From the IMG/VR virus record IMGVR_UViG_3300024520_000047, positions 181,875 through 245,874 of that record: a DNA stretch of 64,000 nt. The stretch is one strand, 5' to 3'. The translations under genes were made by a program, and so were the position numbers. Numbering within the stretch: position 1 is the first letter of the stretch; each line of letters starts with the position of its first letter. This document shows, piece after piece, positions 3,995 to 20,906 of the stretch. The notes beneath the pieces were generated by a model. It had not been told where the DNA came from. It saw only the letters and a list, made by a program, of their open reading frames with translations, and made no database searches.

Positions 3995-4019
3995 ATGGGG
4001 ACTATTGGTCCCCATTTTT
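3995..4019 (+). terminator. Rho-independent terminator
   Basis: ATGGGGAC-TATTG-GTCCCCAT hairpin followed by T-run, after the 1501-3970 operon. Confidence 0.8.
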
Positions 4020-4020
4020 G

Positions 4021-4052
4021 TTTGACAATTTCTTTAATTATGGTTATGTTTC
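4021..4052 (+). promoter_or_regulatory. Host-sigma promoter for glycosylation operon
   Basis: TTTG-N20-TATGTTTC (near Bacteroidota TTTG/TAnnTTTG); also reads as TTGACA-N17-TATGTT. Confidence 0.6.
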
Positions 4053-5301: not shown

Positions 5302-5315
5302 AACTAAAATAAAAG

Positions 5316-6853: not shown

Positions 6854-6858
6854 ATTAA

Positions 6859-7824: not shown

Positions 7825-9353
7825 TGAGTATTAGTATTATATATAGCACTCGTAAAATTGACCCACACTTTAAAGTTCATGCAGAAAAAAGTTGTGGTAT
7901 CCCTAAGGTAGAAATTATTCCCATAGAAAACCCTAATGGAATTTCATTAGCTAAAACATATAATGACGCATTAAAAAAAGCTTCCTACGATATTGTGGTC
8001 TTTACTCATGATGACATAATTTTTGAAACTCGTAATTGGGGACCCAAATTATTAAAGTTATTTAAAAAAAATCCAGAGTTCGGAGTTATCGGAATAGCGG
8101 GTACTACAGACTTAATCGATGGTAGGTGGTGGACTATCAAGGAATCTATGAATGGTATAGTTAGTCACCAGCATGAAGGAAAAAAATGGACAAACACATA
8201 TTCACCCCATCAGGGAAATAAAATAACTGAAATGGTCGTATTAGATGGGTTATTTTTTGCTATAGATAAAACTAAAATTAAACATGTATTTGACGAATCT
8301 TTCGAAGGATTTCATTTTTATGAAATACCATTTTTCTTTAAAAATTATTTAGACGGCGTTAAATTAGGATTAACCACATATTTTAAAATTACACACCTAT
8401 CTATAGGAAGAACCAATGAAGAATGGGAACAAAATAAAATTAAATTTGAAGAAAAATTTAAAGACTCATTACCTGTAAGGTTAACCAATAATAAAACTTT
8501 TGACGAAAAATTAAATTTCGATAGAGATAGTATTGGTTTCGGGATGGTAACCTACAAAGCAGAGCATAGAATAAAACAAAGTGCTTTTACCGTACCTAAA
8601 TGGGTAAAAAATTTTGTTATTGTAAATGACGGAACACCGTATGACAAAGATTCCTATCCCTCTCATGCTCACATAATTCAACATGAAACCAATAAATCTG
8701 TTGGTGCTGCGAAAACAACCGCTATTAATCATCTTTTAAAAACTGACTGTGAACATATTTTCATAATGGAAGACGATATCTTAATAAAAGATGAGGGGGT
8801 GTTTGAAGAATACATAAAGCATTCTTTAATTTCGGGAATAAAGCATTTAAATTTTGCACTGCACGGTCCAGCTAATAAAAAAGGTAGTAAGGGATTTAGT
8901 ACATTAGACGATAGACAAGATGTGGATGGTGAACCAAACCCACGAATGATTATACCCTACCCAGAAAAAGATGTAAAAATAGCCTTATACCCAAACTGTG
9001 TAGGTGCATTTTCATACTATTCCAGACCGGTATTAGAAGACCTAGGTGGGTTTGACCCAGTTTTTAAAAATGCTTGGGAACATGTGGAACACACATATCA
9101 AGCCATTAAAAAAATGTATCACCCAGCATTTTGGTATTTCGCGGATATTGATGGGAGCTGGGAGTATTTAACCGACATACCAAATTCAATAGAAGAAAGT
9201 ACTATTGCTCACACACCAACATGGAATGAAAATTTTAGAAAGGGAACATTGTGGTATAAAAAGAAACACGGAGTATCCCCAACAGAAACCCCTGTTGCAA
9301 CACCAGAAATGGTTAAACAACAATTACAAGTAATATTTCAAAATAGAGGATAA
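7824..9353 (+). CDS. Two-domain GT-A (GT2-like) glycosyltransferase
   Basis: N-domain FTHDDI...LDGLFFA; C-domain VNDG...FIMEDDI; two DxD-type motifs. Confidence 0.8.
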   Translation: MSISIIYSTRKIDPHFKVHAEKSCGIPKVEIIPIENPNGISLAKTYNDALKKASYDIVVFTHDDIIFETRNWGPKLLKLFKKNPEFGVIGIAGTTDLIDGRWWTIKESMNGIVSHQHEGKKWTNTYSPHQGNKITEMVVLDGLFFAIDKTKIKHVFDESFEGFHFYEIPFFFKNYLDGVKLGLTTYFKITHLSIGRTNEEWEQNKIKFEEKFKDSLPVRLTNNKTFDEKLNFDRDSIGFGMVTYKAEHRIKQSAFTVPKWVKNFVIVNDGTPYDKDSYPSHAHIIQHETNKSVGAAKTTAINHLLKTDCEHIFIMEDDILIKDEGVFEEYIKHSLISGIKHLNFALHGPANKKGSKGFSTLDDRQDVDGEPNPRMIIPYPEKDVKIALYPNCVGAFSYYSRPVLEDLGGFDPVFKNAWEHVEHTYQAIKKMYHPAFWYFADIDGSWEYLTDIPNSIEESTIAHTPTWNENFRKGTLWYKKKHGVSPTETPVATPEMVKQQLQVIFQNRG

Positions 9354-10117
9354 TGATTAATTTTAAAGACGTTACATTTATAGTACCCGTAAGATTTGAT
9401 TCAGAAGATAGAAGAAATAATTTCCAAATATCAATGAATTATCTATTAAGGAACTTTGACACAAATATAATTGTATTAGATAGTGATAAAAAATCTAACA
9501 AAGATTTTGTTAAATCTGTTTCAGAAAAGATTAAATACGTTTTTGAAGAAAATAACGAAAAACTATTTCATAGGACAAGATTATTAAATGATATGACTAA
9601 AATGGCAGAAACAGAAATAATTGTTAATTATGATGTTGATGTTATCTTCCCAGTAGAACAATACCTAGATGCTAAGAAAAAAATAGAATCAGGATGTACA
9701 ATGTGTTTTCCGTATGCTGGAAAATTTTACGACATACCTAAAAAATTGTTTAAAAATATTAATGACGATTCATTAGATACAATACCACTAAATAATTGTA
9801 CTCTATTTAATCCAAATTCCGTTGGTGGTGCTATCTTTTTTGATAAAAAAAAATATGGGGACATTGGTTGGGAAAATGAAAATTTTGTATCGTGGGGGCA
9901 TGAAGACTGGGAAAGAATAGTTAGAGCCCAAAAAATGGGACATCAAGTATGTCGAACTAATGGGATTTTATATCATTTAACTCATTATAGAAATTTTAAT
10001 AGTTCTGACCAAAATCCATATTATAACTTTAATGGCCAAGAAATGCAAAAAATTAAAACGATGTCAAAAGAACAATTAAGTGAGCACATTAAAAAATGGA
10101 AATGGATAAAAAAATAA
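9353..10117 (+). CDS. GT-A glycosyltransferase (GT2/GT7-like)
   Basis: NYDVDV; GGAIFF...ENENFVSWGHEDWE matches the GT7-type WGxED motif. Confidence 0.8.
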   Translation: MINFKDVTFIVPVRFDSEDRRNNFQISMNYLLRNFDTNIIVLDSDKKSNKDFVKSVSEKIKYVFEENNEKLFHRTRLLNDMTKMAETEIIVNYDVDVIFPVEQYLDAKKKIESGCTMCFPYAGKFYDIPKKLFKNINDDSLDTIPLNNCTLFNPNSVGGAIFFDKKKYGDIGWENENFVSWGHEDWERIVRAQKMGHQVCRTNGILYHLTHYRNFNSSDQNPYYNFNGQEMQKIKTMSKEQLSEHIKKWKWIKK

Positions 10118-10126
10118 ATAAATAAA

Positions 10127-10906
10127 ATGAAATTAATAGAAGAATCTCTTATAAAAAATGATAAAATTATTAAAGAGTTAAAAAATAAAGCTGCCCAAGA
10201 AGGTGGAAAGAGACACCCTAACACTAAGGATATTTTTAATAGTAATACACAAAAAGGGCATTCCCAATTGGGCCAATATGGGGTAATCAAATCTATTTTT
10301 AAAAAATTGGAGGTAACCAACAAATATTATGTAGAATTTGGTGCAATGAATGGAACCTCACTATCAAATACTGCCGATTTACGAATACATGAAGGTTGGA
10401 GTGGTTTATTATTGGAGGGTACGTCACAGAGTATGCCCAATATTAATTTACATGGTAATACATGGGTTACTAAAGACAATATTAATGAAATTTTTAAAAA
10501 ACATAATGTACCACATATTTTTGATGTGTTAAGTATCGATATAGATGGTAATGATTATTGGGTGTGGGAAGCATTAAATTACGCCCCCCGTTTAGTAGTG
10601 ATAGAAACTAATCCGGGAATATCTAACGAATATCCAGTTGCCATTGAAGAGAATTGCCAAAATACAAATGAGGGTTATTTTGGGGCAAATTTACATGCTT
10701 TTTATGATTTAGCAAAACACAAAGGTTATGAATTAGTTACTACGTTAAGGTGGGATGCTTTCTTTGTAAAAAAAGAAGAATTTCATAAATTAGGGATACC
10801 ATTGATAAGTAAAAAAGAATGCATATCAGAATATTTCCACCCTTCGCCATTTTGGCTTAACTTTAAAAGTAATAAAAAATGGATACATTTAGAAAATAAA
10901 AAATAA
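10127..10906 (+). CDS. FkbM-like SAM methyltransferase
   Basis: YYVEFGAMNG...SNT, GLLLEG, VLSIDIDGNDYWVW. Confidence 0.7.
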   Translation: MKLIEESLIKNDKIIKELKNKAAQEGGKRHPNTKDIFNSNTQKGHSQLGQYGVIKSIFKKLEVTNKYYVEFGAMNGTSLSNTADLRIHEGWSGLLLEGTSQSMPNINLHGNTWVTKDNINEIFKKHNVPHIFDVLSIDIDGNDYWVWEALNYAPRLVVIETNPGISNEYPVAIEENCQNTNEGYFGANLHAFYDLAKHKGYELVTTLRWDAFFVKKEEFHKLGIPLISKKECISEYFHPSPFWLNFKSNKKWIHLENKK

Positions 10907-10940
10907 AATCGATGAAGACTATAAAAAAAATATTTTATAA

Positions 10941-11795
10941 ATGATAGAAATATATTTTGCTCCTGCGTGGGGTTTATCTAATAAAGAAATGACCGATTGG
11001 TATAAAAAGCAGACACCTAGGAATGAGGGGGTATGGGAAGATACTATTTGTGTTTATGATAAAAACGAAGCCAATTATATTATAATGCAAGACACCACAA
11101 CTGAAAACATAGATAAAACTAAAACAATATTTTTTGGAAAAGAGCCTAATCATATAGCCAAACATAGGTGTAATAACTGTATGAAAGAGTTACACCATGA
11201 AAAAGGTAATACTTGGATGCCACAAGTTTGGTGGTTAGACTTTACTTATGATGAGTTAATAAATTTAAAACCATTCAAAAAATCAAAAAATCTAAGTGTT
11301 ATAAATTCAATTAAACAGTCAACAGAAGGCCACAGAAAAAGAATTAATTTAATAAACAATTTAGTTAAAAAATACCCTATAAATGTTGATGTTTGGGGTT
11401 CTATCACTAGTGGTAGGGAAAACACAGGGCCTTATAAAACTAAGTTACCACCAAAAGATAAGAAGAATGGTATATTACCCTACAAATACCACCTAACTAT
11501 TGAGAACGGTTCTTCACCTTATTATTTTTCTGAAAAAATTGTCGACCCTTTACTATGTTGGTCAATGCCTATATACTGGGGTTGTAAAAATATAGATAAA
11601 TTTTTACCTAAAGGCTCATATATTAATATTGATATTAATAAGAAGGGGGTTGAAGATGAAATAATTAGTATTTCTAAAAGTAACATTATGGAAGAGAATA
11701 TAGATAATATTGCTGAGGCAAGAGAGTTAATGTTAAATAAATATAATTTATGGCCTACAATAAAAAAATCTTTCATCGAAGATAATTTTTTTTAA
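10941..11795 (+). CDS. GT10 family alpha-1,3/4-fucosyltransferase-like
   Basis: YKYHLTIENGSSPYYFSEKI...PIYWG is the GT10 fucosyltransferase motif. Confidence 0.8.
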   Translation: MIEIYFAPAWGLSNKEMTDWYKKQTPRNEGVWEDTICVYDKNEANYIIMQDTTTENIDKTKTIFFGKEPNHIAKHRCNNCMKELHHEKGNTWMPQVWWLDFTYDELINLKPFKKSKNLSVINSIKQSTEGHRKRINLINNLVKKYPINVDVWGSITSGRENTGPYKTKLPPKDKKNGILPYKYHLTIENGSSPYYFSEKIVDPLLCWSMPIYWGCKNIDKFLPKGSYINIDINKKGVEDEIISISKSNIMEENIDNIAEARELMLNKYNLWPTIKKSFIEDNFF

Positions 11796-11798
11796 AAA

Positions 11799-12536
11799 AT
11801 GAATAAACTATCAATCCTATCACCACTTAAAATAACGACTAAAAAACAATTTGATATTTTTGTAAGGTGTTTATCTACATATAAAAATATAATACAAAAT
11901 GAAAATACAGAATTTTTAGTGGTTAACGAATCTACCGATAATTTTAGAAATATGGTAGAAGATGAAATAAAATCTATAAAAAAAAATGTTATATTTTTAA
12001 ACGTTAATGGTATGGTAAATTCAGTTAAGGAATTAATAAAAAAATCAAAAAATAAATATATAATGTTTTTTTTAGATGATGTTGAATTATTATTTGAACC
12101 TAATACGTGTATTAATGATTGTATTTCGGTTATGGATGAAGATGATTCCATAGACCAAATAAAAATTGGCGGTGGTAAAGTACATAGCTCTAATGAAAAA
12201 CAAATAGACGTATTTAAAACAACACACCAACCAGTAAAAATTAATAACAACATTGTATGGTTAAATGAATCAAGTAAGGAAGAACCGGCATACCTAATTT
12301 CACAATGGAATAGTATTATGAGGTCTAAGTTACTTAAGAGTTTAGTTAAAAAATTAAACACTAATTTTAATAACTGGGATGCTTTTACTGTTCAATGTTC
12401 TAAAATATATAATAAAAAAAGTAAAGAAACTAAAATTGGTTGGTTAAATTTGAGCCCTGGTTTATATGCTTGGGGAAGGACCCAAGTTTCTTTTGAAAAC
12501 TACAAATTAAATTATGATAAAAACAATAGGGGATAG
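11799..12536 (+). CDS. GT2-like glycosyltransferase (divergent)
   Basis: KYIMFFLDDV DxD-like motif; glycosylation operon context. Confidence 0.5.
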   Translation: MNKLSILSPLKITTKKQFDIFVRCLSTYKNIIQNENTEFLVVNESTDNFRNMVEDEIKSIKKNVIFLNVNGMVNSVKELIKKSKNKYIMFFLDDVELLFEPNTCINDCISVMDEDDSIDQIKIGGGKVHSSNEKQIDVFKTTHQPVKINNNIVWLNESSKEEPAYLISQWNSIMRSKLLKSLVKKLNTNFNNWDAFTVQCSKIYNKKSKETKIGWLNLSPGLYAWGRTQVSFENYKLNYDKNNRG

Positions 12537-13107
12537 TCATTCAGATAGTAAATGGAGTAATTGGGCTTCAGTACCAGGTGTAGAAACCAATTGGTTGAAG
12601 GGTCAGGGTAAACTAGCTTATTCTATCGGTAGAGATGGTATTAATATAACTGATTATAATATAATGGAGGGTGATACTGTTATTTTTTGTTTTGGTGAAA
12701 TAGATTGTAGGTGTCACGTACATAAACATATAACTAAAAATAAATCGTATAAAGACGTTATTGATGGTATTGTTTTTTCTTATGTGAATGCTGTTAAAAA
12801 AAATGTAAATACCATACCTAACACTAGATTTTGTATATACAATGTAATACCACCCGTTAGAAAATTAAAAGTACACCAAAATCCAGAATACCCACATTTA
12901 GGTTCTGATAATGATAGAAAAAATTATCATGAATATTTTAATAAAAAATTAAAAGAACAATGTGTAGAAAATAATTTTGTTTTTTTTGGTGTTTATGAAG
13001 AATATTCAGATGAAGAAGGTTTTTTAAAAAAAGAAATGAGTGATAATAATGTACACCTAAGAGACCCTAAACCAAGGATTAATTTTATTAAGAAATATTT
13101 AATATAA
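12514..13107 (+). CDS. SGNH/GDSL hydrolase-fold protein (possible acetylesterase or acetyltransferase)
   Basis: IGDSH, FGEIDCRCH, C-terminal DNNVH (DxxH). Confidence 0.65.
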   Translation: MIKTIGDSHSDSKWSNWASVPGVETNWLKGQGKLAYSIGRDGINITDYNIMEGDTVIFCFGEIDCRCHVHKHITKNKSYKDVIDGIVFSYVNAVKKNVNTIPNTRFCIYNVIPPVRKLKVHQNPEYPHLGSDNDRKNYHEYFNKKLKEQCVENNFVFFGVYEEYSDEEGFLKKEMSDNNVHLRDPKPRINFIKKYLI

Positions 13108-13113
13108 GTAATT

Positions 13114-13836
13114 ATGGAACCACTAAAAAAATGGCAAGAATTAACACAAAAAGAAAAAGAAAATTTTACTTTAAATAATAAAATTAAAGTAAAACATTGG
13201 TTAATAGATGGTAGGAATAATAAAAGTAAATTAAACGGTTTTTATGATAAAAAACTGGTTAATTCAATGATTGAAAAAATAAGAAATAAGGAAGTTAGTT
13301 ATTACGGACAATCAGATAAAGAATTATATGCCCTCTTAGAAAAAATAAATCTAAAAGATAAAAATGTTGCTATAATAGGTTCTACACAACCTTGGTATGA
13401 ATCTATAGTTATACATTATGGTGGCAAACCCGTAACTATAGAGTATTCAAAATTAAAAACAAATGATGATAGATTAAAATTACTAACAGTAGAAGAATTT
13501 TATAAAAACCCAGTTAAGTTTGATATAATATTTTCAATATCGTCTTTTGAACACGATGGATTAGGTAGGTATGGTGACCCAATAAACCCTTTTGGGGATA
13601 TTGACGCTATGTCAAAAATGAAAGATATTATAAAAGAGGATGGTTTATTATTCCTAGCTGTACCAATAGGTTTAGATACTATTTTTTGGAATGCTCATAG
13701 AATTTATGGTGAACATAGATACCCTAAATTAATAGAAGGCTGGGAAATTGTTGATAAAGTGAGTTTTAATGAAGGTAGATTAAAAAAAGAAAACGGAATG
13801 TACCAACCCGTTGTCGTATTAAAAAAAAAGAAATAA
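13114..13836 (+). CDS. DUF268-like methyltransferase-fold protein
   Basis: IIGSTQPWYE...SISSFEHDGLGRYGDPINPFGD...LAVPIG. Confidence 0.7.
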   Translation: MEPLKKWQELTQKEKENFTLNNKIKVKHWLIDGRNNKSKLNGFYDKKLVNSMIEKIRNKEVSYYGQSDKELYALLEKINLKDKNVAIIGSTQPWYESIVIHYGGKPVTIEYSKLKTNDDRLKLLTVEEFYKNPVKFDIIFSISSFEHDGLGRYGDPINPFGDIDAMSKMKDIIKEDGLLFLAVPIGLDTIFWNAHRIYGEHRYPKLIEGWEIVDKVSFNEGRLKKENGMYQPVVVLKKKK

Positions 13837-13838
13837 AC

Positions 13839-14372
13839 ATGTTAAAATTACATTTAGGTTGTGGTGATAAAATATTACCAAACTTTACAAATATAGATAT
13901 AAGACCAATGAAAGGCGTTGATTTAATTGAAGATATTAGTACGCTAAAGAAGATAGAAGATAATAGTGTTGAATTGATTTATGCTTGTCATGTTTTAGAA
14001 CATTTTGGTAGGTATGAATATGTTAATGTTTTAACTAGATGGTTCAATCTATTAAAGGATGGTGGTAAATTGAGGTTAGCGATTCCAGATTTCGAAAAGG
14101 TCGTAAATTATTATAATGAAACTAAAGATTTAAAAAAAATAATGGGTTTTTTATATGGTGGGCAAACTTATGAACAAAATTACCATTACTGTACTTGGGA
14201 TTTTAATACAATTAGTGAAGACTTAAAGTCTATTGGTTTTAAAGAGGTTTACAAGTATAACTGGAGGGATACTGAACATTCTGAAGTAGATGATTTTTCA
14301 CAAGCATACTTACCACATATGGATAAAGAAAATGGTGAACTAATGAGTTTAAACATTGAAGCAATTAAATAA
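13839..14372 (+). CDS. Class I SAM-dependent methyltransferase
   Basis: LHLGCG, IYACHVLEH, LKDGGKLRLAIPD. Confidence 0.85.
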   Translation: MLKLHLGCGDKILPNFTNIDIRPMKGVDLIEDISTLKKIEDNSVELIYACHVLEHFGRYEYVNVLTRWFNLLKDGGKLRLAIPDFEKVVNYYNETKDLKKIMGFLYGGQTYEQNYHYCTWDFNTISEDLKSIGFKEVYKYNWRDTEHSEVDDFSQAYLPHMDKENGELMSLNIEAIK

Positions 14373-14379
14373 TATTAAT

Positions 14380-14931
14380 ATGGAACTAGAAGTACAACAA
14401 AATTTAAATACGGATAATTGGTTCAATTACCAAGATTTTTATAAAGTAATTTCCGAAAAGGATTTTAATGTTTTTATAGAAGTTGGCACATGGAAAGGCC
14501 ATTCTATTTGTTATTTAGGTAATTTACTTAAAAATAAGAATGTTAAGATTTATGCGGTAGATTTATGGGATGAAACATATAAATACGAAGATAACCCCAG
14601 ACTTAAAAAACAAAAAGTTATTTTACATGATATTTTTAAACAAAACCTAAAAAATAATGGTCTAAGTGATAAGATTGTAGATATTAAGAGTTTATCATGG
14701 GAAGCCGCATCAAATTTTAAAGATGGAGAAGTAGATTTTGTTTTCATAGATGCCGACCACGAATATGAGTCTGTGATTAAAGATATTAAAGCGTGGTTAC
14801 CCAAAATCAAAAAAAACGGTATAATTTCAGGACATGATTACTTTAACCCTTGTGGGGTAAAAAAAGCCGTAGATGAGATTTTCGGTGATGACGTACTGTT
14901 TAACGGCCCTTGTTGGTTTGTAGAATTATAA
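14380..14931 (+). CDS. Class I SAM methyltransferase (Methyltransf_24-like)
   Basis: IEVGTWKGHS, AVDLW, FVFIDADHEYE, GIISGHDY; start moved from 14356 to the ATG after the upstream stop. Confidence 0.85.
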   Translation: MELEVQQNLNTDNWFNYQDFYKVISEKDFNVFIEVGTWKGHSICYLGNLLKNKNVKIYAVDLWDETYKYEDNPRLKKQKVILHDIFKQNLKNNGLSDKIVDIKSLSWEAASNFKDGEVDFVFIDADHEYESVIKDIKAWLPKIKKNGIISGHDYFNPCGVKKAVDEIFGDDVLFNGPCWFVEL

Positions 14932-14934
14932 AAT

Positions 14935-15543
14935 ATGCCTATATCAGATAAATATAAATTAATTTTTGTTCACATACCTAAAAATGCTGGTACTGCGATA
15001 ACAAACACTTTAGAGATGACAGATATTGGTCATCATGGCTGGGGTTATTATAAATATAAGTACCCTAACAAATGGCAAAATTATAAAAAAATAAGTGTTA
15101 TTAGAAACCCTTGGGATAGGATTGTTTCGTGTTATGAATACGCTAAAATGGAGAAAAGTTATTGGCACGCAAAAGAAGGTAAGGCTAGAGCGGGTAAACA
15201 TTTAGATTATGATTTACTAAAAGACAAATCATTTGAACAATGTTTAGATATTTTAAAAAACACACCTCAAAAATTAAAACACCAAGGTTGGAGAAACCAA
15301 TCAGACTACATATATAAAAATAACCAACTAATGGTTGATTACACTCTAGATATGGATGAAATTAATGATAAATTAGGGGACATACTTGGTTTTGAAATTA
15401 ATATACCTAAAATCAACGTTAGTAATAATAAAAACTATAGAGATTATTACGTTAACAATAATTTAATAGATATTGTATCTAAAAATTATAAAATAGATTT
15501 AATAAATTTTAATTATGAAGAATCATTTAATATCTTATCCTAG
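14935..15543 (+). CDS. Sulfotransferase (family 2-like)
   Basis: FVHIPKNAGT (5'-PSB loop) and IRNPWDRIVSCY (3'-PB motif). Confidence 0.85.
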   Translation: MPISDKYKLIFVHIPKNAGTAITNTLEMTDIGHHGWGYYKYKYPNKWQNYKKISVIRNPWDRIVSCYEYAKMEKSYWHAKEGKARAGKHLDYDLLKDKSFEQCLDILKNTPQKLKHQGWRNQSDYIYKNNQLMVDYTLDMDEINDKLGDILGFEINIPKINVSNNKNYRDYYVNNNLIDIVSKNYKIDLINFNYEESFNILS

Positions 15544-16171
15544 GTCGGGTAATCATTGGGTTAGGTTTATTGTGGAGTGGTTTTCTGGTAAACCAACTAA
15601 AGGTATGAGCAAAGACGATAAACCCATATATATTAATTTAGTTAATAAGGATACTCTAAGTCATGTCTCTGGTACTGATTATATACTTTTTAAAAATCAT
15701 TGGTACTCAAACATTAAACCTAATGAAAACTTAATTTTAATAGTTAGAAACCCCAAGGAAGCTATTATGAGACATAAAAATAAATTTACTGATGATGATT
15801 TAAAATGGTTTATGGGTTTAATAAAATCTTTTCATAACCATAAAGGTAATAAAATGTTAATTTATTATGAAGACCTGCTAACTCAACCCGAGAATAACAT
15901 AGAAAAACTTTTAAAATTTTTAAATATTTTAGATAAAAAAAAATTAAGTATTTTTATGAGTAAGTATGAAGAATTATTTAATGAATCTATAAATGTTTAT
16001 GATAATACAGGTAAAAAAGAAATAATTTCAGGTGGTAAAGGTAGGGTTTCTAAGACTAAGGGTAAGAAATTAAATTTCCATAGTAATTCATTAACCAATA
16101 AAGATAATCAAAGATTTATAAATTATTTGAACAAGAGTGGGGTAAAAAAATACATAATTAGATATGAATAA
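15515..16171 (+). CDS. Sulfotransferase (family 1-like)
   Basis: ISYPRSGNHWVR and IVRNPKEA PAPS-binding motifs; IYYEDLL. Confidence 0.75.
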   Translation: MKNHLISYPRSGNHWVRFIVEWFSGKPTKGMSKDDKPIYINLVNKDTLSHVSGTDYILFKNHWYSNIKPNENLILIVRNPKEAIMRHKNKFTDDDLKWFMGLIKSFHNHKGNKMLIYYEDLLTQPENNIEKLLKFLNILDKKKLSIFMSKYEELFNESINVYDNTGKKEIISGGKGRVSKTKGKKLNFHSNSLTNKDNQRFINYLNKSGVKKYIIRYE

Positions 16172-17192
16172 AAAAGTTTTAATCACAGGCATCAATGGTC
16201 AAGATGGTTCATATCTTGCAGAATTATTATTAGAAAAAGAATATGAGGTGTGGGGTATCGTAAAAAGAAATTCGGTTTCTGAAACACAATCAACTAGGAT
16301 TGAACATCTATTAGAAAATACACGTTTTAATACTGAATATGCAGATTTAACTGATATGGCCTCCTTAATTAGGGTATTATCTAAGATACAACCAATAGAA
16401 ATTTATAATTTAGCAGCCCAATCACATGTTAGAATTAGTTTTGACCAACCAATTTATACCGCAAATGCAACAGGATTAGGAACACTTAATTTATTAGAAG
16501 CTTGTAGAATGGTTTCACCTAATTCTAAAATATATCAGGCATCATCTTCTGAAATGTTTGGTAATAATATTGACGAAGATGGTTATCAAAGAGAAACAAC
16601 ACCAATGAACCCCGTATCACCTTATGGTTGTGCAAAAGTATTTTCATATAACATTTGTAGAAATTATAGAAATTCATATGGGATGAAAATATGGAATGGG
16701 ATATTATTTAACCATGAGTCACCAAGACGTGGAACTAATTTTGTAACTAATAAAGTGGTTAAAGCAGCGGTTAGGATAAAATTAGGGTTACAATATAATT
16801 TACAACTCGGTAATATGGATGCAACTAGAGATTGGGGCCATGCAAAAGATTACGTTGAAGCTATGTGGTTAATGTTACAAACAAAAAATCCAGATGATTA
16901 TGTTTGTGCTACTGGTGTTTCCCACTCAGTCAAAGATTTGGTTGAATATACATTTAATTCATTAGGTTTAAATTATCAAGATTACATTCATAAAAATGCA
17001 AAACATTTCAGACCTGAAGAGTTAAAAAATTTAAAAGGTGATTCTAGTAAAATAAGAAATGAGTTGGGCTGGGAGCCTACATATACATTTGAATCTATGT
17101 TGGATGAAATGGTAGAATATTGGATTGATTATTATGGATTTGATTATTTGCGATTAGAAAACGGAAGCTTAAGATTTCAAAAAAGAAATTAA
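16164..17192 (+). CDS. gmd: GDP-mannose 4,6-dehydratase
   Basis: ITGINGQDGSYLAE, NLAAQSHV, SPYGCAK, GILFNHESPRRG, RDWGHAKDY. Confidence 0.97.
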   Translation: MNKKVLITGINGQDGSYLAELLLEKEYEVWGIVKRNSVSETQSTRIEHLLENTRFNTEYADLTDMASLIRVLSKIQPIEIYNLAAQSHVRISFDQPIYTANATGLGTLNLLEACRMVSPNSKIYQASSSEMFGNNIDEDGYQRETTPMNPVSPYGCAKVFSYNICRNYRNSYGMKIWNGILFNHESPRRGTNFVTNKVVKAAVRIKLGLQYNLQLGNMDATRDWGHAKDYVEAMWLMLQTKNPDDYVCATGVSHSVKDLVEYTFNSLGLNYQDYIHKNAKHFRPEELKNLKGDSSKIRNELGWEPTYTFESMLDEMVEYWIDYYGFDYLRLENGSLRFQKRN

Positions 17193-17195
17193 AAC

Positions 17196-18131
17196 ATGAA
17201 AAGAATATTAGTAACTGGAGGTAATGGATTAGTTGGGTCCCAATTCGTGGGTGAAAACTATGCTTATTTCTCATCAAAAGATTGTGATTTAAAAAATACT
17301 GGAGAAACAGAAAATTTATTTAAGGATGGTTGGGACGCTATAATTCATTGTGCCGCTAAAGTAGGTGGATTAGGTGGAAATATGAATTTTAAAGGAGAAT
17401 TTTTTTATGATAATATCATGATAAACACAAATGTTATAGAATCTGCTAGAAAGTTTGGTATTAAAAACTTAGTGGCATTCCTATCTACATGTGTTTTTCC
17501 CAATGATGTGGAGTACCCACTTACCGAAAAAAAGATTCATTTGGGTCCCCCACACTTTTCAAATGATGCATATGCATATGCAAAACGTATGGCAGATGTC
17601 CAAATTAGAGCATATAGAGAACAATATGGATTAAACTATAAATCTGTTATACCAACCAATATTTATGGTCCCAACGATAACTTTGATATAGAAAATGGGC
17701 ATGTTGTACCATCATTAATCCATAAATGTTATATTGCAAAAGAAACAGGAACACCTTTAACAATATGGGGTAGTGGAAAACCATTAAGAGAATTTATATT
17801 TAGTAAAGATATTGCTAAATTAACTGAATGGGTATTAGATAATTATAATGAAGATGAACCAATTATATTATCTACTTCAGAAGAAATATCAATTAAAGAA
17901 GTGGTGGAGATGGTAGTTGAGTTAATGAACTTTAGAGGTAAAATTATATGGGATAAAGATAAGCCTGATGGGCAATTTAGAAAACCTAGCGATAATAGTA
18001 AAATTAAACATTATTTACCAGATTTTAAATTTACTTCATTATATATGGGATTAGCTGAAACTATTTCTCATTTTTTAAATAATTATGATGTCCTTAGAAA
18101 AGGAAACTATACACTTTCAGACCATATATGA
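17196..18131 (+). CDS. fcl: GDP-L-fucose synthase
   Basis: VTGGNGLVG, CAAKVGG, LSTCVFP, YAYAKR, PTNIYGP, WGSGKPLREF, DGQFRKP. Confidence 0.95.
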   Translation: MKRILVTGGNGLVGSQFVGENYAYFSSKDCDLKNTGETENLFKDGWDAIIHCAAKVGGLGGNMNFKGEFFYDNIMINTNVIESARKFGIKNLVAFLSTCVFPNDVEYPLTEKKIHLGPPHFSNDAYAYAKRMADVQIRAYREQYGLNYKSVIPTNIYGPNDNFDIENGHVVPSLIHKCYIAKETGTPLTIWGSGKPLREFIFSKDIAKLTEWVLDNYNEDEPIILSTSEEISIKEVVEMVVELMNFRGKIIWDKDKPDGQFRKPSDNSKIKHYLPDFKFTSLYMGLAETISHFLNNYDVLRKGNYTLSDHI

Positions 18132-18144
18132 TTAAATTAGTTAT

Positions 18145-18723
18145 ATGAGTAAAAAAATCATTTCAATACAGATTGATGGGGTTATTAGAGATACTGTAGA
18201 TAAAATTTTGGAGATATATGAAGCAGAAAATAAAATAACTCTGGAAAGACCCCTACCTTCCTTAGACTTACAAAAAGAATTAAATTTTAATTCCAAAGAA
18301 GAGTTAATAGATTTTATTTATGTGGAATCACCTATGCGGGTATTCGGTTACGCGAAAGAAATAGAAGATGACAGTGTATTATTTTTAAATGAGATATATA
18401 AAAAATTTAGAGATACTTATAAAATTGTTCTTTTTTCTAATGAAGTAGAGAAATCTAAACCCGCAACTCTAATGTTTTTAGCTAGAATAGGTTGTCTTAT
18501 AGACAATGTACAATTTTACCCACTAGAAGATTATAAAACTATATGGACTGAAAGTGATATTATAATTTCAGCTTCAACTGAAATTATAAAAAATAAACCA
18601 AAGGATAAAATTTTTATTAAATATGAAAATTACTACAATGATGATGTAAAATCAGAATTTAATATAAATTCCCTTAAACAATTATTAGAAAATGAATATT
18701 TTGAAAGAAATGAATTCGCTTAA
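18145..18723 (+). CDS. HAD/NT5C-like protein with degenerate catalytic motif
   Basis: ISIQIDGVIRD equivalent to the IDIDGVLRD motif I, nucleophile Asp replaced by Gln. Confidence 0.5.
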   Translation: MSKKIISIQIDGVIRDTVDKILEIYEAENKITLERPLPSLDLQKELNFNSKEELIDFIYVESPMRVFGYAKEIEDDSVLFLNEIYKKFRDTYKIVLFSNEVEKSKPATLMFLARIGCLIDNVQFYPLEDYKTIWTESDIIISASTEIIKNKPKDKIFIKYENYYNDDVKSEFNINSLKQLLENEYFERNEFA

Positions 18724-19009: not shown

Positions 19010-19011
19010 AA

Positions 19012-20103
19012 ATGACAGAACAAACTGAAAATGCGAAAAAAATAGAAGAAGCACTTAATATTGTTAAAAACAAAGAATCTAAAATCTATTTTCTTACACA
19101 AGACACTAAAGGAAGACCAGCCGCGTCTGTAACTTATATTTATGAATTAGTAAGTACACTAAATAATCTGGGATATAATGCTATTATTCTTCATGAAAAA
19201 AATGACTATAAATTAAAGAGTGATGATGAAGGAATGGGCATTGAAGAATGGCTAGGGTCCGAATATACAGAATTACCACACGCTTCAGTGGAAGAAGGAC
19301 AACTCACTGTTGGTCCTTCAGATTTCCTTATAGTTCCAGAATTATTTGCTCATGTTATGGAACAGACAAAAGATATGACATGTACTAAAATAGTTTTATG
19401 TCAAGCTTATGACTATATTTTTGAAATGTTACAACCCGGAATTAATTGGGCACATTATGGTTATCATAAAGCAATAACAACTTCTACTTCCACTAAAGAG
19501 TATATTAATAGTATGTTTCCAAATATTGAAGTGAGTATAATTCCAGTAAGTATCTCAAATAAATTTACACCGATTGAGAAACCTAAACAGCCTCTAATAG
19601 CTATCCACACTAGAGAACCTAGAGATACGATGAAAATTGTAAAAGCTTTTTATGCGAGATTTCCACAATTTAAATGGATTACATTTAGAGATATGAGGGG
19701 GATGACAATAGAACAATTTAGTGAAGCTTTAGAGGATGCGTGTGCGGGTGTATGGGTTGATGACGTTTCTGGTTTTGGAACCTTCCCATTAGAATGTATG
19801 AAGGTAGGAATTCCTGTTATAGGTAAGATACCAAACCTCAGACCTGAATGGTTAAGGGAAGAAAACGGTTTTTGGACGTTTGAACAAAATCAAATGGTGG
19901 ATATTATAAACGCCTTTATTAAAACGTGGTTAGAAGATAGTGTTCCTGAAAAATTATTCACAGAAATGGAAGAAACAATAAAACCATATGATAGTGAAAC
20001 ACAAAAAAAAGAACTTACCACAGTTTTTGGGGGTCTTTTTGGTAGCCTTACCACAGAATTAGAAGGGGCATTAAATAAATTTACAATAAACGAAGAAAAT
20101 TAA
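19012..20103 (+). CDS. Glycosyltransferase, GT-B (GT4-like)
   Basis: DFLIVPE; SGFGTFPLECMKVGIPVIG resembles EGFGLPxLEAMxxGxPV. Confidence 0.7.
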   Translation: MTEQTENAKKIEEALNIVKNKESKIYFLTQDTKGRPAASVTYIYELVSTLNNLGYNAIILHEKNDYKLKSDDEGMGIEEWLGSEYTELPHASVEEGQLTVGPSDFLIVPELFAHVMEQTKDMTCTKIVLCQAYDYIFEMLQPGINWAHYGYHKAITTSTSTKEYINSMFPNIEVSIIPVSISNKFTPIEKPKQPLIAIHTREPRDTMKIVKAFYARFPQFKWITFRDMRGMTIEQFSEALEDACAGVWVDDVSGFGTFPLECMKVGIPVIGKIPNLRPEWLREENGFWTFEQNQMVDIINAFIKTWLEDSVPEKLFTEMEETIKPYDSETQKKELTTVFGGLFGSLTTELEGALNKFTINEEN

Positions 20104-20104
20104 T

Positions 20105-20905
20105 ATGAAAGACATTACAATTTTAATACCAGTACACACTATTAATGATAAATTAGATGAATACTTTACCAACGCTATTACAAGCATTAAAACACAAAAA
20201 AGTATACCGTCAAATATTTTAATAGTTAGCTCAACAGACAATAAATTAACAACTTACCTAGACTCTTTTGACTTTGGGGATTTAAATGTAGAAATTATAA
20301 AAAATGAAGGAGATACTACATTTATGGGCCAAGTAAACTACGGAGTTAATAAAATACAAACAAAATGGTTTTCCATACTAGAATATGATGATGAATATTC
20401 AAATATATGGTTTTCTAATGTGGAAAAGCATTACGACTATTATAATGATGTGGATGTATTTTTACCCTTAGTGGTAGATGTTACGGAAGATGGTCAATTT
20501 GTTAGTTTTACAAATGAAGCTGTATGGGCTATGAATTTCAGTGACAAAATGGGTTATTTAGATAATGCATGTTTGTTAAGATACCCTAATTTCCAAACTA
20601 GTGGTATGGTTATAAATAAAGAAAAATTTGAGGATATTGGTGGGTTTAAACCATCTGTAAAATTAACTTTTGTTTATGAATTTTTATTACGTGCAACATA
20701 TAACGACCTTAAGGTTTTCACTATCCCAAAAGTAGGTTACAAACATACAAACATGCGAGAAGGCTCTTTATTTTGGGATTATCGATATACTGAAGGTACC
20801 AATAAAATAGAACCCCAAGAAGCGTCTTTTTGGATTGAAACGGCAAAAAAAGAATATTTTTTCACTACTGATAGAGGTATAACGTACACCCCAGAAGTAG
20901 TTTAA
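20105..20905 (+). CDS. GT2 family glycosyltransferase
   Basis: ITILIPV, WFSILEYDDE, FEDIGGF, YEFLLRA. Confidence 0.8.
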   Translation: MKDITILIPVHTINDKLDEYFTNAITSIKTQKSIPSNILIVSSTDNKLTTYLDSFDFGDLNVEIIKNEGDTTFMGQVNYGVNKIQTKWFSILEYDDEYSNIWFSNVEKHYDYYNDVDVFLPLVVDVTEDGQFVSFTNEAVWAMNFSDKMGYLDNACLLRYPNFQTSGMVINKEKFEDIGGFKPSVKLTFVYEFLLRATYNDLKVFTIPKVGYKHTNMREGSLFWDYRYTEGTNKIEPQEASFWIETAKKEYFFTTDRGITYTPEVV

Positions 20906-20906
20906 T

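What the first reader, a model, noticed from the sequence alone, without database searches (positions are those of the whole stretch)
10127..18131. Swappable-looking cassette for a fucosylated, sulfated, methylated glycan
Seen: between flanking GT genes sits an especially AT-rich run of modifier genes: GT10 fucosyltransferase, two different sulfotransferase families with intact PAPS-binding motifs, methyltransferases, SGNH, gmd, fcl. No PAPS synthesis genes (cysC/D/N) occur in the window. Inference: the product would resemble a sulfated fucan. A phage coated in such a glycan could mimic algal polysaccharides that Bacteroidota bind and import, or vary its surface serotype-style by cassette exchange.
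Basis: inference. Interest (0 to 1): 0.65.

Follow-up and report, generated by a model that had tools for sequence, protein, structure and literature searches.

The report
Swappable glycan-gene island in marine phage
A large marine phage that probably infects Bacteroidota carries a gene island for building a fucose-containing, sulfated and methylated sugar chain. Related phages carry different versions of the island at the same spot, but what the sugar chain is attached to is still unknown.

Summary
Window 10127-18131 encodes an FkbM-like methyltransferase, a GT10 fucosyltransferase, a GT2, an SGNH esterase, three more methyltransferase-like proteins, two sulfotransferases of different families, Gmd and Fcl. 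This stretch is the longest AT-rich run of the contig, but only about 5 points below the mean GC.

The window is the end of a 245,874-bp T4-like IMG/VR phage contig found in seawater metagenomes. Bacteroidota-type promoters point to the host. No PAPS-synthesis gene occurs anywhere in the contig.

Cassette exchange is supported. Eleven related lineages keep the same anchors: RmlB and a two-domain GT on the left, and phoH or an NT5C-like gene plus GT4-like and GT2 genes on the right. All eleven differ in between, with perosamine-type, acetyl, carbamoyl, pyruvyl, GT11 or GT25 genes. The sulfotransferase pair is far less diverged at synonymous sites (dS 0.27-0.39) than the backbone (dS above 2), so it was transferred recently.

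"Sulfated fucan" is not supported: there is one fucosyltransferase and no polymerase, flippase or initiating transferase, and every enzyme is soluble.

The acceptor is unresolved. I slightly favour a phage protein or the virion (0.42) over the host envelope (0.36). The closest known kind is the "LPS" islands of T4-like cyanophages, so this is a new variant of a known kind.

The parts
3997..4052 (+). Terminator-like hairpin (3997-4013 plus a T run), followed by a promoter-like TTGACA (4022-4027), 17 nt, then TATGTTTC (4045-4052). This is the likely start of the glycan gene block.
   Evidence: The hairpin folds at -13.9 kcal/mol. The hairpin plus TTGAC[AT] arrangement is conserved upstream of the homologous gene in L007 and L010 (L016 keeps the TTGACA box but shows no hairpin). 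The TTGAC[AT] class occurs 9 times in upstream regions against 3.3 expected. Its function is inferred.
4078..5301 (+). Conserved glycosyltransferase (407 aa), part of the left backbone.
   Evidence: phrog_7162 glycosyltransferase, 2e-39. 53-74% identical in 10 related contigs.
6859..7824 (+). dTDP-glucose 4,6-dehydratase (RmlB), the conserved left anchor.
   Evidence: TIGR01181 scores 375.3, above the 365.1 cut-off. 50-68% identical in relatives.
7824..9353 (+). Two-domain glycosyltransferase (509 aa). The N-terminal GT2_5 domain is conserved. The C-terminal GT domain is variable and marks the left edge of the variable island.
   Evidence: PF13712, 3e-24, over aa 28-173. phrog_2456 and phrog_1579 glycosyltransferase over aa 236-487. 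Only the first 120-250 aa match in relatives.
9353..10117 (+). Glycosyltransferase (GT-A type, Glyco_transf_7C / GT2_2) in the variable part.
   Evidence: PF02709, 5e-8. A counterpart is present in L106 but not in M0904.
10127..10906 (+). FkbM-like methyltransferase (inferred).
   Evidence: No Pfam, NCBIfam or PHROG hit. phmmer gives 1e-10 to L001:3663-4391, which itself hits PF05050 at 1.7e-15. 86% identical to the M0904 copy, dS 0.62.
10941..11795 (+). GT10 fucosyltransferase.
   Evidence: PF00852, 2.9e-13. Aligned to H. pylori FucT 2NZW across the conserved motif.
11799..12536 (+). GT2 glycosyltransferase.
   Evidence: PF00535, 2.4e-5, just above the cut-off.
12514..13107 (+). SGNH esterase or acyl-handling enzyme (O-acetyl removal or transfer).
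   Evidence: AF2 model pLDDT 92.6. Foldseek best hits are sialate O-acetylesterases 6xpg and 7pzh and GDSL lipases. Invariant S8, H9, G39/G61, N110, D177 and H181.
13114..13836 (+). DUF268 protein (methyltransferase-like).
   Evidence: PF03269, 7e-34. That it is a methyltransferase is my own knowledge of the fold class and was not tested.
13839..14372 (+). SAM methyltransferase (Methyltransf_11, weak hit).
   Evidence: PF08241, 5.6e-5. Conserved in M0904, L001, L002 and L018.
14356..14931 (+). O-methyltransferase-like protein (Methyltransf_24; weaker hits to CmcI and TylF).
   Evidence: PF13578, 1.4e-23.
14935..15543 (+). PAPS-dependent sulfotransferase, Sulfotransfer_2 family.
   Evidence: PF03567, 5e-10. 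PAPS-binding residues are invariant in alignment A1. 90% aa identity to M0904, dS 0.27, dN/dS 0.17.
15515..16171 (+). PAPS-dependent sulfotransferase, Sulfotransfer_1-like.
   Evidence: PF00685, 5e-8. Invariant S11, G12, K60, H62 and R78 in alignment A2. AF2 pLDDT 91.4, with PDB fold hits SULT7A1, SULT1C2 and SOT18. 93% aa identity to M0904, dS 0.39.
16164..17192 (+). GDP-mannose 4,6-dehydratase (Gmd).
   Evidence: PF16363, 3.7e-122. TIGR01472 scores 400 against a cut-off of 415.
17196..18131 (+). GDP-L-fucose synthase-like epimerase/reductase (Fcl).
   Evidence: PF01370, 2.5e-47. The best NCBIfam hit is NF047922 Fcl at 233 bits, below its 500 cut-off.
18145..18723 (+). Conserved right anchor (NT5C-like lead). 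In relatives phoH sits just upstream of it; here phoH is missing.
19012..20103 (+). Conserved protein, probably a GT-B (GT4-like) glycosyltransferase. This is a lead only.
   Evidence: PDB 8xsg 'putative glycosyltransferase', E 0.007. Atlas neighbours carry PF00534. 63-68% identical in relatives.
20105..20905 (+). Conserved GT2 glycosyltransferase (right backbone).
   Evidence: PF00535, 5e-6. 69-75% identical in six relatives.

Best explanation
This is a glycan-biosynthesis island at a fixed recombination hot-spot of a T4-like jumbo phage of marine Bacteroidota.

Shown:
- A conserved frame is kept in all relatives. It consists of a GT at 4078, RmlB, the N-terminal GT domain of the 509-aa protein, a GT4-like protein and a GT2.
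- The stretch between the frame genes (about 8.5-18.1 kb) is replaced lineage by lineage.
- In this phage the inserted module encodes Gmd and Fcl, one GT10 fucosyltransferase, two or three further GTs, two PAPS-type sulfotransferases with conserved cofactor sites, up to four methyltransferases and an SGNH esterase.
- All of them are soluble and under purifying selection.

Inferred:
- The enzymes work in the host cytoplasm on host GDP-mannose, dTDP-glucose, SAM and PAPS.
- They build a short, branched hetero-oligosaccharide that carries fucose, sulfate and O-methyl groups. The conserved GTs make the core and the swapped module makes the outer part.

My pick for the acceptor is an inference and close to a tie. 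I favour a phage-encoded, probably virion, protein. This would resemble chloroviruses and mycobacteriophages, so that module exchange changes the particle's surface chemistry.
For: Enzyme identities.

Phage identity and habitat:
- T4-like capsid, portal and terminase genes.
- A 245,874-bp IMG/VR virus record.
- The cassette is held near-identically in 6 seawater metagenome runs.

Host:
- TTTG-N17-22-TAnnTTTG promoters occur in 12 of 91 upstream regions. Shuffles give a mean of 0.5 and a maximum of 3.
- The nearest cultured capsid and portal relatives include Flavobacterium phage immuto.

Fixed locus with variable content: 11 lineages share the anchors but have different interiors.

Recent exchange:
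- The backbone is 67-73% identical at the nucleotide level, while 10116-10929 and 14934-17135 are about 86% identical.
- Four-fold-site identity is 0.84 and 0.76 for the two sulfotransferases, against 0.26-0.43 for the backbone.
- dS is 0.27-0.39 for the sulfotransferases and above 2 for the backbone.
- By backbone similarity the window is closer to L001 and L002, yet its cassette matches M0904.

The genes are functional rather than junk: dN/dS is 0.08-0.26 and catalytic residues are invariant.

Support for a phage-side acceptor:
- No membrane protein is encoded in 1501-21605, and no polytopic membrane protein in the contig, so there is no PGT, Wzx, Wzy or ABC exporter.
- A conserved GT core across phages only 40-75% identical suggests a conserved acceptor.
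- The island adjoins the structural module.
- The same ST2-GT10-ST1-methyltransferase module recurs in two unrelated large-phage backgrounds (L017; L105).
- No cellular locus among the 80 examined has this combination.
Against: - No direct evidence exists for any acceptor.
- The enzyme families (GT25, GT11, GT10, pyruvyl- and carbamoyl-transferases, DegT) are typical of LPS and capsule loci.
- The block seems to start at a host-sigmaA-like promoter, not at the late-type motif that precedes the structural genes.
- The literature on the analogous cyanophage clusters assumes host-surface modification (PMC3037559, PMC7824862, PMC12801897).
- The contig is only 77% complete, so missing export or PAPS genes could lie in the unseen part.
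- Substrate and linkage specificities are unknown.
Confidence: 0.42

Rival explanations
1. Host-envelope remodelling. The phage enzymes act at the inner face of the membrane on host undecaprenyl-linked LPS, O-antigen or capsule intermediates. The host's own flippase and ligase then export the altered, fucosylated and sulfated glycan. This changes the infected cell's surface, blocking superinfection or stopping progeny from re-adsorbing to doomed cells or debris. The island chemistry and the exchange are as in the best explanation; only the acceptor differs.
For: - The families are typical of O-antigen, LOS and capsule synthesis.
- Low-GC variable genes between conserved flanks resemble bacterial O-antigen loci.
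- The promoter in front of the block is host-type and therefore probably early.
- The phage lacks its own initiation and export genes, so it could be plugging into the host pathway.
- Distant homologues of the Sulfotransfer_2 enzyme sit in polysaccharide loci of marine Flavobacteriaceae.
- This is the published hypothesis for cyanophage clusters (PMC7824862, PMC12801897).
Against: - It has never been demonstrated for a lytic T4-like phage. PMC3037559 states that the function is unknown.
- A conserved set of 4-5 GTs across phages that probably infect different hosts fits poorly with host-specific acceptors.
- Surface replacement on a non-growing infected cell is slow.
- The nearest cellular homologues are 34% identical or less, so there has been no recent capture from a host locus.
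Confidence: 0.36
2. DNA hypermodification. The GTs and modifiers decorate a modified base in the phage DNA with a complex glycan to evade restriction, as in T-even glucosylation or the oligosaccharide-bearing thymidine of phage YerA41.
For: - Phage GTs are known to glycosylate DNA (Pyle 2024, as cited in PMC12619734; YerA41 in PMC9023294).
- The island sits beside a dUTPase and an NT5C-like gene.
Against: - The contig encodes a bona fide thymidylate synthase (350 bits against a 325 cut-off) and a bona fide dUTPase. It has no hydroxymethylase-like second copy and no ThyX.
- As far as I know, fucosyltransferase, sulfotransferases and sugar O-methyltransferases are not known on DNA glycans.
Confidence: 0.05
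3. A soluble product. The island makes a free or lipid- or small-molecule-linked glycoside, such as a decoy, signal or storage compound, rather than decorating a virion or the envelope.
For: - All enzymes are soluble and no carrier or export genes are present.
- Sulfotransferase_1-type enzymes often act on small acceptors; the PDB fold hits are SULTs, StaL and Teg12.
Against: - Seven or so GT domains and a conserved GT core point to an oligosaccharide on a defined macromolecular acceptor.
- No aglycone-biosynthesis genes were seen in the block.
Confidence: 0.09
4. Non-functional passenger ('stuffer') DNA that merely fills the capsid.
For: PMC3037559 raised this possibility for the cyanophage LPS clusters. 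The island is AT-rich and variable.
Against: - All ORFs are intact and tightly packed.
- dN/dS is 0.08-0.26.
- Cofactor and catalytic residues are invariant across 20-27 homologues.
- The same functional combination recurs in independent lineages.
Confidence: 0.03

Closest known systems
'LPS' or cell-wall synthesis/modification gene clusters of T4-like cyanomyoviruses (P-SSM2, S-SSM7, S-SM2, S-SCSM2R)
   Same: - T4-like marine myovirus with an enlarged genome.
- A cluster of many GTs (GT10-like, GT11, GT25, GT2) with NDP-sugar dehydratases or epimerases and methyltransferases.
- The clusters lie near phoH and are polymorphic between related phages.
- Their function is unproven (PMC3037559, PMC7824862, PMC12801897).
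   Different: - The host here is probably Bacteroidota, not a cyanobacterium.
- This island has two sulfotransferase families and four methyltransferase-like genes. The Sulfotransfer_2 enzyme has tblastn hits in only 2 of 50,697 GenBank phage records, both uncultured huge phages.
- The hot-spot is bracketed by conserved GTs, and a recent sub-module transfer is documented here.
Virus-encoded capsid glycosylation of chloroviruses (PBCV-1: GMD, GMER, multi-domain GT A064R, O-methyltransferases).
   Same: - Soluble virus-encoded GTs.
- Its own GDP-fucose pathway.
- A multi-domain GT and sugar O-methylation.
- A conserved core glycan with variable decorations between strains.
   Different: - That is a eukaryotic algal virus.
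- No sulfation is known there.
- The capsid attachment is demonstrated there and untested here.
- No sequence relationship was tested.
Mycobacteriophage virion glycosylation (Freeman et al. 2023, as cited in PMC12619734 and PMC12801897)
   Same: Phage-encoded GTs, and in some phages methyltransferases, decorate capsid and tail-tube proteins. The glycans change how the particle is recognised.
   Different: - Those are small siphoviruses of Actinobacteria with one to a few GTs.
- They have no fucose or sulfate genes.
- Glycosylation of the virion is shown by experiment there, not here.
Bacterial O-antigen or capsule loci, and sulfated-glycan loci linked to cysD-cysNC (nodPQ-nodH-like)
   Same: - Low-GC variable GT and modifier genes lie between conserved flanks.
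- A homologue of the Sulfotransfer_1-like enzyme lies in a bacterial contig next to CysD, a CysN-CysC fusion, a second sulfotransferase and GT2 genes.
- Two Flavobacteriaceae loci with a Sulfotransfer_2 homologue appear to have APS kinase within about 7-10 kb, judged from coordinates on the same numbered contig.
   Different: - The phage island has no PAPS synthesis, initiating transferase, flippase, polymerase or exporter.
- The nearest cellular sulfotransferases are 34% identical or less.
'Moraphages', a lineage of large aquatic phages with predicted Bacteroidota hosts (PMC12619734)
   Same: Large aquatic phages with Flavobacteriia predicted as hosts. Four glycosyltransferase orthogroups are in their core genome.
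   Different: - They are mostly from freshwater.
- The paper mentions no sulfotransferase or fucose genes.
- Whether this contig belongs to that lineage was not tested.

Membership tests
T4-like marine myovirus 'LPS/CWSM' gene cluster | T4-like virion module in the same genome | tested here: met
   Major head protein phrog_138 at 7.6e-69, portal phrog_213 at 1e-66, TerL phrog_2 at 8e-38.
T4-like marine myovirus 'LPS/CWSM' gene cluster | Cluster of several GTs with NDP-sugar-modifying enzymes, polymorphic between relatives, near phoH | tested here: met
   phoH borders the island in six relatives but is absent from this contig.
T4-like marine myovirus 'LPS/CWSM' gene cluster | Cyanobacterial host | tested here: not met
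   Bacteroidota-type promoters occur in 12 of 91 upstream regions. The nearest cultured relatives include a Flavobacterium phage.
GT10 alpha-1,3/4-fucosyltransferase | GT10 C-terminal domain with the nucleotide-sugar binding motif, including the conserved Glu-Lys | tested here: met
   PF00852 scores 50.3 bits against a 23.9 cut-off. The motif aligns to 2NZW residues 223-285. Activity and linkage cannot be tested here.
PAPS-dependent sulfotransferase (Sulfotransfer_2) | 5'-phosphosulfate-binding loop (PKxxGT) and 3'-phosphate-binding motif (RxPxxRxxS) | tested here: met
   HIPKNAGT and RNPWDRIVS are present. These residues are invariant in 20 homologues.
PAPS-dependent sulfotransferase (Sulfotransfer_1-like) | Sulfotransferase fold, PSB loop, catalytic His and 3'-PB Arg/Ser | tested here: inconclusive
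   The fold is met: pLDDT 91, and the top 40 or more PDB hits are PAP(S)-bound sulfotransferases. The PSB loop YPRSGNHW, invariant K60/H62 and R78 are present. The canonical 3'-PB serine position holds Arg.
De novo GDP-L-fucose pathway (Gmd + Fcl) | Both enzymes present as equivalogs | tested here: inconclusive
   Gmd: Pfam 408 bits, but TIGR01472 scores 400 against a 415 cut-off. Fcl: the best hit is NF047922 at 233 bits against a 500 cut-off. No GDP-mannose pyrophosphorylase is in the contig, so the host must supply the precursor.
SGNH hydrolase | Flavodoxin-like SGNH fold with Ser, Gly, Asn and His blocks | tested here: met
   The Pfam hit alone was below cut-off.
Sulfated fucan (fucoidan-like) biosynthesis | Fucose-based polymer: several or processive fucosyltransferases plus polymerisation and export machinery | tested here: not met
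   One GT10 only. There is no polymerase, flippase or exporter, and no polytopic membrane protein in 246 kb.
Self-contained Wzx/Wzy- or ABC-dependent O-antigen or capsule locus | Initiating phosphoglycosyltransferase, flippase or ABC transporter, and polymerase or ligase | tested here: not met
   A hydropathy scan of all 246 predicted proteins finds none with more than 5 predicted TM segments and none in the island. The contig is 77% complete.
Phage DNA glycosylation system (T-even type) | Pyrimidine hydroxymethylase providing the attachment base | tested here: not met
   The only ThyA-family gene is a true thymidylate synthase, there is no ThyX, and the dUTPase is canonical.
Virus-encoded virion glycosylation (chlorovirus or mycobacteriophage type) | Glycan covalently attached to a structural protein | not testable with these tools
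   Only circumstantial features are met: soluble GTs, its own fucose pathway, and a conserved core with a variable periphery.

The most novel reading that the evidence does not exclude
Particles of a widespread clade of marine Bacteroidota jumbo phages may be coated with a phage-built oligosaccharide bearing fucose, sulfate and O-methyl groups. The outer part would be swapped between lineages like a serotype. This would be the first sulfated glycan on a bacteriophage particle. It might serve colloidal stability, protection or, more speculatively, engagement of the host's glycan-binding uptake machinery. It would also tie a phage's surface chemistry to whether its host makes PAPS: a strong APS-kinase match was found in only 54 of 101 sampled genomes of the family of Formosa sp. 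PL04.
Probability: 0.3. Interest if true: 0.8.

Novelty: new variant of a known kind. Interest (0 to 1): 0.55.

Why it matters
Large glycan-gene clusters in marine T4-like phages have been known since 2005-2010. Their function is still open; one paper even asks whether they are stuffer DNA.

This locus adds three things:
- It shows the clusters are under purifying selection and are exchanged as sub-modules at a fixed hot-spot.
- It extends them to phages of Bacteroidota, the main degraders of algal polysaccharide.
- It adds sulfation that depends on host PAPS.

It also gives a concrete test system. The conserved GT frame with swappable modifiers predicts a conserved core glycan with a variable periphery. 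That can be looked for on virions or on infected cells. If the glycan is on the particle, phage surfaces in the sea carry serotype-like, anionic glycans. That would bear on adsorption, aggregation, grazing and host recognition.

Tried and rejected
- Megablast of the cassette against 50,697 GenBank phages found no match. tblastn of the GT4-like protein also found none.
- The T4 late promoter TATAAATA is not enriched: 23 matches against 18 expected. A different late-like motif, [AC]TATTTAT[AT], was found instead. It does not precede the island.
- I looked for Ser/Thr-rich tails on structural proteins as possible O-glycosylation sites and found nothing diagnostic.
- I tested whether the fast-evolving 556-aa protein (24124-25794) co-varies with cassette type. 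It is 49% identical to the relative sharing the cassette against 42-43% to the others. With only three comparisons and saturated synonymous sites, this is inconclusive.
- One run held just 11800-12716 of a variant, which is too weak to call population-level mosaicism. No RNA run holds the locus, so expression is untested.
- No cellular locus among the 80 with Sulfotransfer_2 homologues carries the phage's gene combination.
- I did not run complex prediction because I make no binding claim.

Full report
**What the window is.** The window is the last 64 kb of a single 245,874-bp contig, G000:C1:181875-245874. The contig is an IMG/VR virus record, linear, with a CheckV completeness of 77%. The window encodes a T4-type major head protein (27974-29770, minus strand), a portal protein (33875-35683) and a large terminase (36009-37727). 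The nearest named relatives of the capsid and portal are only about 40% identical. They are an uncultured 484-kb phage (LR756508), Microcystis phage Mel-JY01, Flavobacterium phage vB_FspM_immuto and Rhodothermus phage RM378. The cassette DNA is held near-identically (57-98% of sampled words) in six seawater-metagenome runs from six studies. One of these may be the source. No RNA run holds it.

**Check of the observation.** Genes from 4078 to 21605 lie on the + strand, overlapping or separated by at most 35 nt. A 78-aa ORF fills the one apparent gap.
- 10127-10906: no family hit
- 10941-11795: GT10 fucosyltransferase
- 11799-12536: GT2
- 12514-13107: weak GDSL hit
- 13114-13836: DUF268
- 13839-14372: Methyltransf_11
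- 14356-14931: Methyltransf_24
- 14935-15543: Sulfotransfer_2
- 15515-16171: Sulfotransfer_1
- 16164-17192: Gmd
- 17196-18131: Fcl-like epimerase

I strengthened the weaker calls.
- *GT10.* It aligns to the H. pylori alpha1,3-fucosyltransferase structure across the conserved donor-binding motif.
- *Sulfotransfer_2.* The PAPS loops are invariant in 20 homologues.
- *Sulfotransfer_1-like.* The protein folds with pLDDT 91 into a structure whose best PDB matches are all PAP(S)-bound sulfotransferases. It keeps the PSB loop, a Lys-x-His and the 3'-phosphate Arg. The canonical serine position holds Arg.
- *SGNH.* The candidate folds with pLDDT 92.6 onto sialate O-acetylesterases and GDSL lipases, with invariant Ser, Gly, Asn and His.
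- *10127-10906.* It is FkbM-methyltransferase-like only by transitivity.

AT-richness is real but modest. GC is 27-28% against a contig mean of 33.2% (SD 3.3). Three of the five lowest 2-kb windows are contiguous here.

No APS kinase, ATP sulfurylase or CysD exists anywhere in the contig. There is also no sugar-1-phosphate nucleotidyltransferase or RmlC. PAPS, GDP-mannose and dTDP-glucose must therefore come from the host.

**The surroundings belong to the same system.**
- Upstream lie a conserved GT (4078-5301, phrog_7162) and a true dTDP-glucose 4,6-dehydratase (6859-7824, above the TIGR01181 cut-off).
- Next comes a 509-aa protein with two GT domains (7824-9353), followed by a GT-A enzyme (9353-10117).
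- Downstream lie an NT5C-like protein, a probable GT-B protein (19012-20103, a lead only), a GT2 (20105-20905) and a sigma-factor-like protein.
- None of these proteins has a predicted membrane helix. The whole contig encodes no polytopic membrane protein that could be a flippase, polymerase or initiating transferase.

**Comparison with relatives.** I used the flanking proteins 22018-23937 and 4078-5301 as probes in IMG/VR and took exact-protein contexts from ENA and Tara assemblies. This recovered eleven related lineages.

All keep the left anchor. This is dUTPase and the 505-550-aa GT, of which only the first 120-250 aa are conserved, with RmlB between them in most lineages but not in L013, L015 or L106. 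Where the right side is seen, all keep the right anchor: phoH, the NT5C-like gene, the GT4-like gene, GT2 and the sigma-like gene.

Between the anchors no two lineages are alike.
- *UViG_3300006750_000002 (M0904).* It has the window's genes in another order, plus GT25 and a third sulfotransferase.
- *A Tara lineage found in 67 data blocks (L018-L020).* It has GT25, GT10, Methyltransf_24, DUF268, Methyltransf_11, two Sulfotransfer_2 genes, Gmd, Fcl and a thioesterase.
- *L106.* It adds a pyruvyltransferase.
- *L001, L002 and L005.* They combine Gmd with DegT aminotransferases, a perosamine-type route.
- *L010.* It has a UDP-GlcNAc 2-epimerase.
- *L011.* It has a GT11 and a carbamoyltransferase.
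- *L013.* Seen from anchor to anchor, it has DegT plus a GNAT and no sulfotransferase.

Sulfotransferases occur in 6 of the 11 lineages and Gmd in 8. The islands are 0-4 GC points below their flanks in every locus.

This phage alone lacks phoH, both at the island's right edge and anywhere else in the contig.

**Evidence for recent exchange.**
- Between the window and M0904 the backbone is 67-73% identical at the nucleotide level. Positions 10116-10929 and 14934-17135 are about 86% identical.
- Identity at four-fold degenerate sites is 0.26-0.43 for backbone genes, which is saturated. It is 0.84 and 0.76 for the two sulfotransferases.
- By the Nei-Gojobori method (synonymous versus non-synonymous substitution counts), dS is 0.27 and 0.39 for the sulfotransferases. 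It is 0.62 for the FkbM-like gene, 1.08 for gmd, and above 2 or saturated for the backbone.
- By backbone similarity the window is closer to L001 and L002 than to M0904, yet its cassette matches M0904.
- The sulfotransferase pair therefore moved between lineages long after they split.
- dN/dS of 0.08-0.26 shows the genes are maintained by selection.

**Distribution.**
- *Sulfotransfer_2.* It has 138 homologues in the large protein collection. All are environmental and about 196 aa long, and none comes from a named cultured organism.
- Among 50,697 GenBank phage records only two uncultured huge phages match it.
- One of these, LR756508, carries its own cluster: three tandem Sulfotransfer_2 genes, a GT10-like gene, a Sulfotransfer_1-like gene, a Methyltransf_24-like gene, fcl and gmd.
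- An unrelated phage contig (L105) carries ST2-GT10-unknown-ST1-FkbM-FkbM. The combination is thus a recurring functional unit.
- Cellular homologues are 34% identical or less on real chromosomes. Several are in marine Bacteroidota such as Formosa, Aequorivita, Mesonia, Gangjinia, Saprospiraceae and Cyclobacteriaceae. None of the 80 loci has the phage combination.
- *Sulfotransfer_1-like.* A bacterial homologue sits beside cysD, a cysN-cysC fusion, another sulfotransferase and GT2 genes. Cells bring PAPS synthesis to such loci; the phage does not.
- Sulfotransferase-like proteins are annotated in other uncultured phages, in cyanophage S-SCSM1 and in giant viruses. The enzyme class is therefore not new to viruses.

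**Host.**
- In 91 upstream regions of the contig, the Bacteroidota housekeeping-promoter pattern TTTG-N17-22-TAnnTTTG occurs in 12. Shuffles give a mean of 0.5 and a maximum of 3, and the density is 19-fold that of the genome. That this pattern marks Bacteroidota sigma-A promoters is established knowledge, not tested here.
- A second motif, [AC]TATTTAT[AT], precedes the terminase gene and other large, presumably structural, genes beside it. It occurs in 26 regions against 3.9 expected, and is probably the late promoter.
- The glycan block follows a terminator hairpin (3997-4013). A TTGACA-N17-TATGTTTC element comes next. The hairpin plus TTGAC[AT] arrangement recurs in L007 and L010, and L016 keeps the TTGACA box. 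This looks host-type rather than late, though the reading is an inference.
- APS kinase is present in all five Bacteroidota genomes that hold a Sulfotransfer_2 homologue. It gives a strong match in 54 of 101 sampled genomes of the family of Formosa sp. PL04. Host PAPS is therefore plausible but not universal.

**What it most likely does.**

*Shown.* The enzyme set, its conservation, its solubility, the conserved frame with a variable interior, and the recent transfer.

*Inferred.* The enzymes assemble a short, branched hetero-oligosaccharide in the cytoplasm. The conserved GTs lay down a core. The swapped module adds fucose (Gmd, Fcl, GT10), further sugars, sulfate and O-methyl groups, and handles O-acetyl groups.

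It is not a fucan. There is one fucosyltransferase among about seven other GT domains, and nothing to polymerise or export a polymer.

*The acceptor is open.* I slightly favour a phage protein or the virion (0.42) for four reasons:
- A GT core conserved across phages that are only 40-75% identical implies a conserved acceptor.
- No lipid-carrier or export genes are present.
- The island adjoins the structural module.
- The gene set resembles the chlorovirus capsid-glycan system. This last point is from my own knowledge.

Remodelling of the host envelope through the host's own carrier and export system (0.36) is the published guess for cyanophage clusters. It fits the LPS-type enzyme families and the host-type promoter.

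The remaining rivals are weaker:
- *DNA glycosylation (0.05).* It is disfavoured by a true thymidylate synthase, a true dUTPase and the lack of any hydroxymethylase.
- *A soluble glycoside (0.09).* It cannot be excluded.
- *Stuffer DNA (0.03).* It is contradicted by the selection data.

**Comparison with what is known.**
- The closest known kind is the large 'LPS' gene clusters of T4-like cyanomyoviruses. In S-SSM7 the cluster holds epimerases, a GT10-like gene, a methyltransferase, three GT11 genes and a GT25.
- These clusters lie near hli03 or phoH, and their function is stated to be unknown (PMC3037559).
- Their polymorphism has been noted and read as O-antigen diversification against superinfection (PMC7824862). 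S-SCSM2R has 13 GTs, including a GT10 (PMC12801897).
- A lineage of large aquatic phages of Bacteroidota with four core GT families has been described. The paper mentions neither sulfotransferases nor fucose genes (PMC12619734).
- This locus is therefore a new variant of a known kind. It has a different host phylum and adds sulfation and heavy methylation. It also has a clearly delimited hot-spot with conserved GT anchors and direct evidence of sub-module transfer.

**Verdict.**
- The cassette-exchange idea is supported.
- The 'sulfated fucan' reading is rejected.
- The virion-coat and algal-mimicry ideas are untested.
- Interest is 0.55.

Noticed in passing
Whole contig; in the window e.g. 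27375-27406 (upstream of 27433-27927), upstream of 50389-51210(-), 62217-62534(-) and 62955-63410(+): Bacteroidota-type promoters (TTTG-N17-22-TAnnTTTG) occur in 12 of 91 upstream regions, against 0.5 expected. This is a sequence-only indicator of the host phylum.
   Followed up: yes
Window, upstream of 36009-37727(-), 29811-31493(-), 31597-32307(-), 47954-50341(-), 52989-55271(-), 59123-61624(-), 1501-2175(+); also 25795-25803: The motif [AC]TATTTAT[AT] lies 5-40 nt before start codons in 26 of 91 upstream regions (3.9 expected), mostly before structural genes. It is probably this clade's late promoter. The T4 consensus TATAAATA is not enriched.
   Followed up: partly
Window 18131-18145 (junction of fcl and the NT5C-like gene): phoH borders the island in six relatives but is missing here and from the whole 246-kb contig. 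The event that installed this cassette version may have removed it.
   Followed up: partly
Window 24124-25794 (+): This 556-aa protein has no family hit and is by far the fastest-evolving gene of the conserved block: 42-49% identical, against 59-80% for its neighbours. It is slightly closer to the relative that shares the cassette. It is a candidate surface or acceptor protein, but with only three comparisons.
   Followed up: partly
Window 20907-21605 (+): A conserved 232-aa protein (76-80% identical in relatives) has weak Sigma70_r2 and ECF-sigma hits directly after the glycan block. It may be the phage's late sigma factor.
   Followed up: no
L017 (LR756508.1 297825-328436), 14335-24174: A 484-kb uncultured phage carries three tandem Sulfotransfer_2 paralogues with GT10-like, Sulfotransfer_1-like, Methyltransf_24-like, fcl and gmd genes. 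It is an independent, larger version of the module.
   Followed up: partly
L102 and L103 (bacterial contigs of 379-414 kb), 3641-10738: A bacterial homologue of the Sulfotransfer_1-like enzyme lies in a locus with cysD, a cysN-cysC fusion, a Stf0-like sulfotransferase and GT2 genes. This looks like a dedicated sulfated-glycan locus with its own PAPS supply.
   Followed up: no
Window 27974-29770 (-): The major head protein is 598 aa, but the strong match to the T4-type capsid family covers mainly aa 347-575. The N-terminal half is lineage-specific or much more diverged.
   Followed up: no
Window 51443-51517 (+): A single tRNA-Arg (anticodon TCT, reading AGA) lies in the window.
   Followed up: no
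Window 11800-12716, in run X9: One seawater run holds a 2.7-kb contig that matches only the GT2 and SGNH part of the cassette at about 98% identity and then diverges. This hints that this sub-module also sits in another background, but coverage is too low to be sure.
   Followed up: partly
Window 12514-13107 (+): The SGNH protein belongs to a very large environmental family: at least 608 clusters at E of 1e-3 or better, about 195 aa long, on contigs up to 318 kb. It is mostly unannotated and is far commoner than the sulfotransferases.
   Followed up: no
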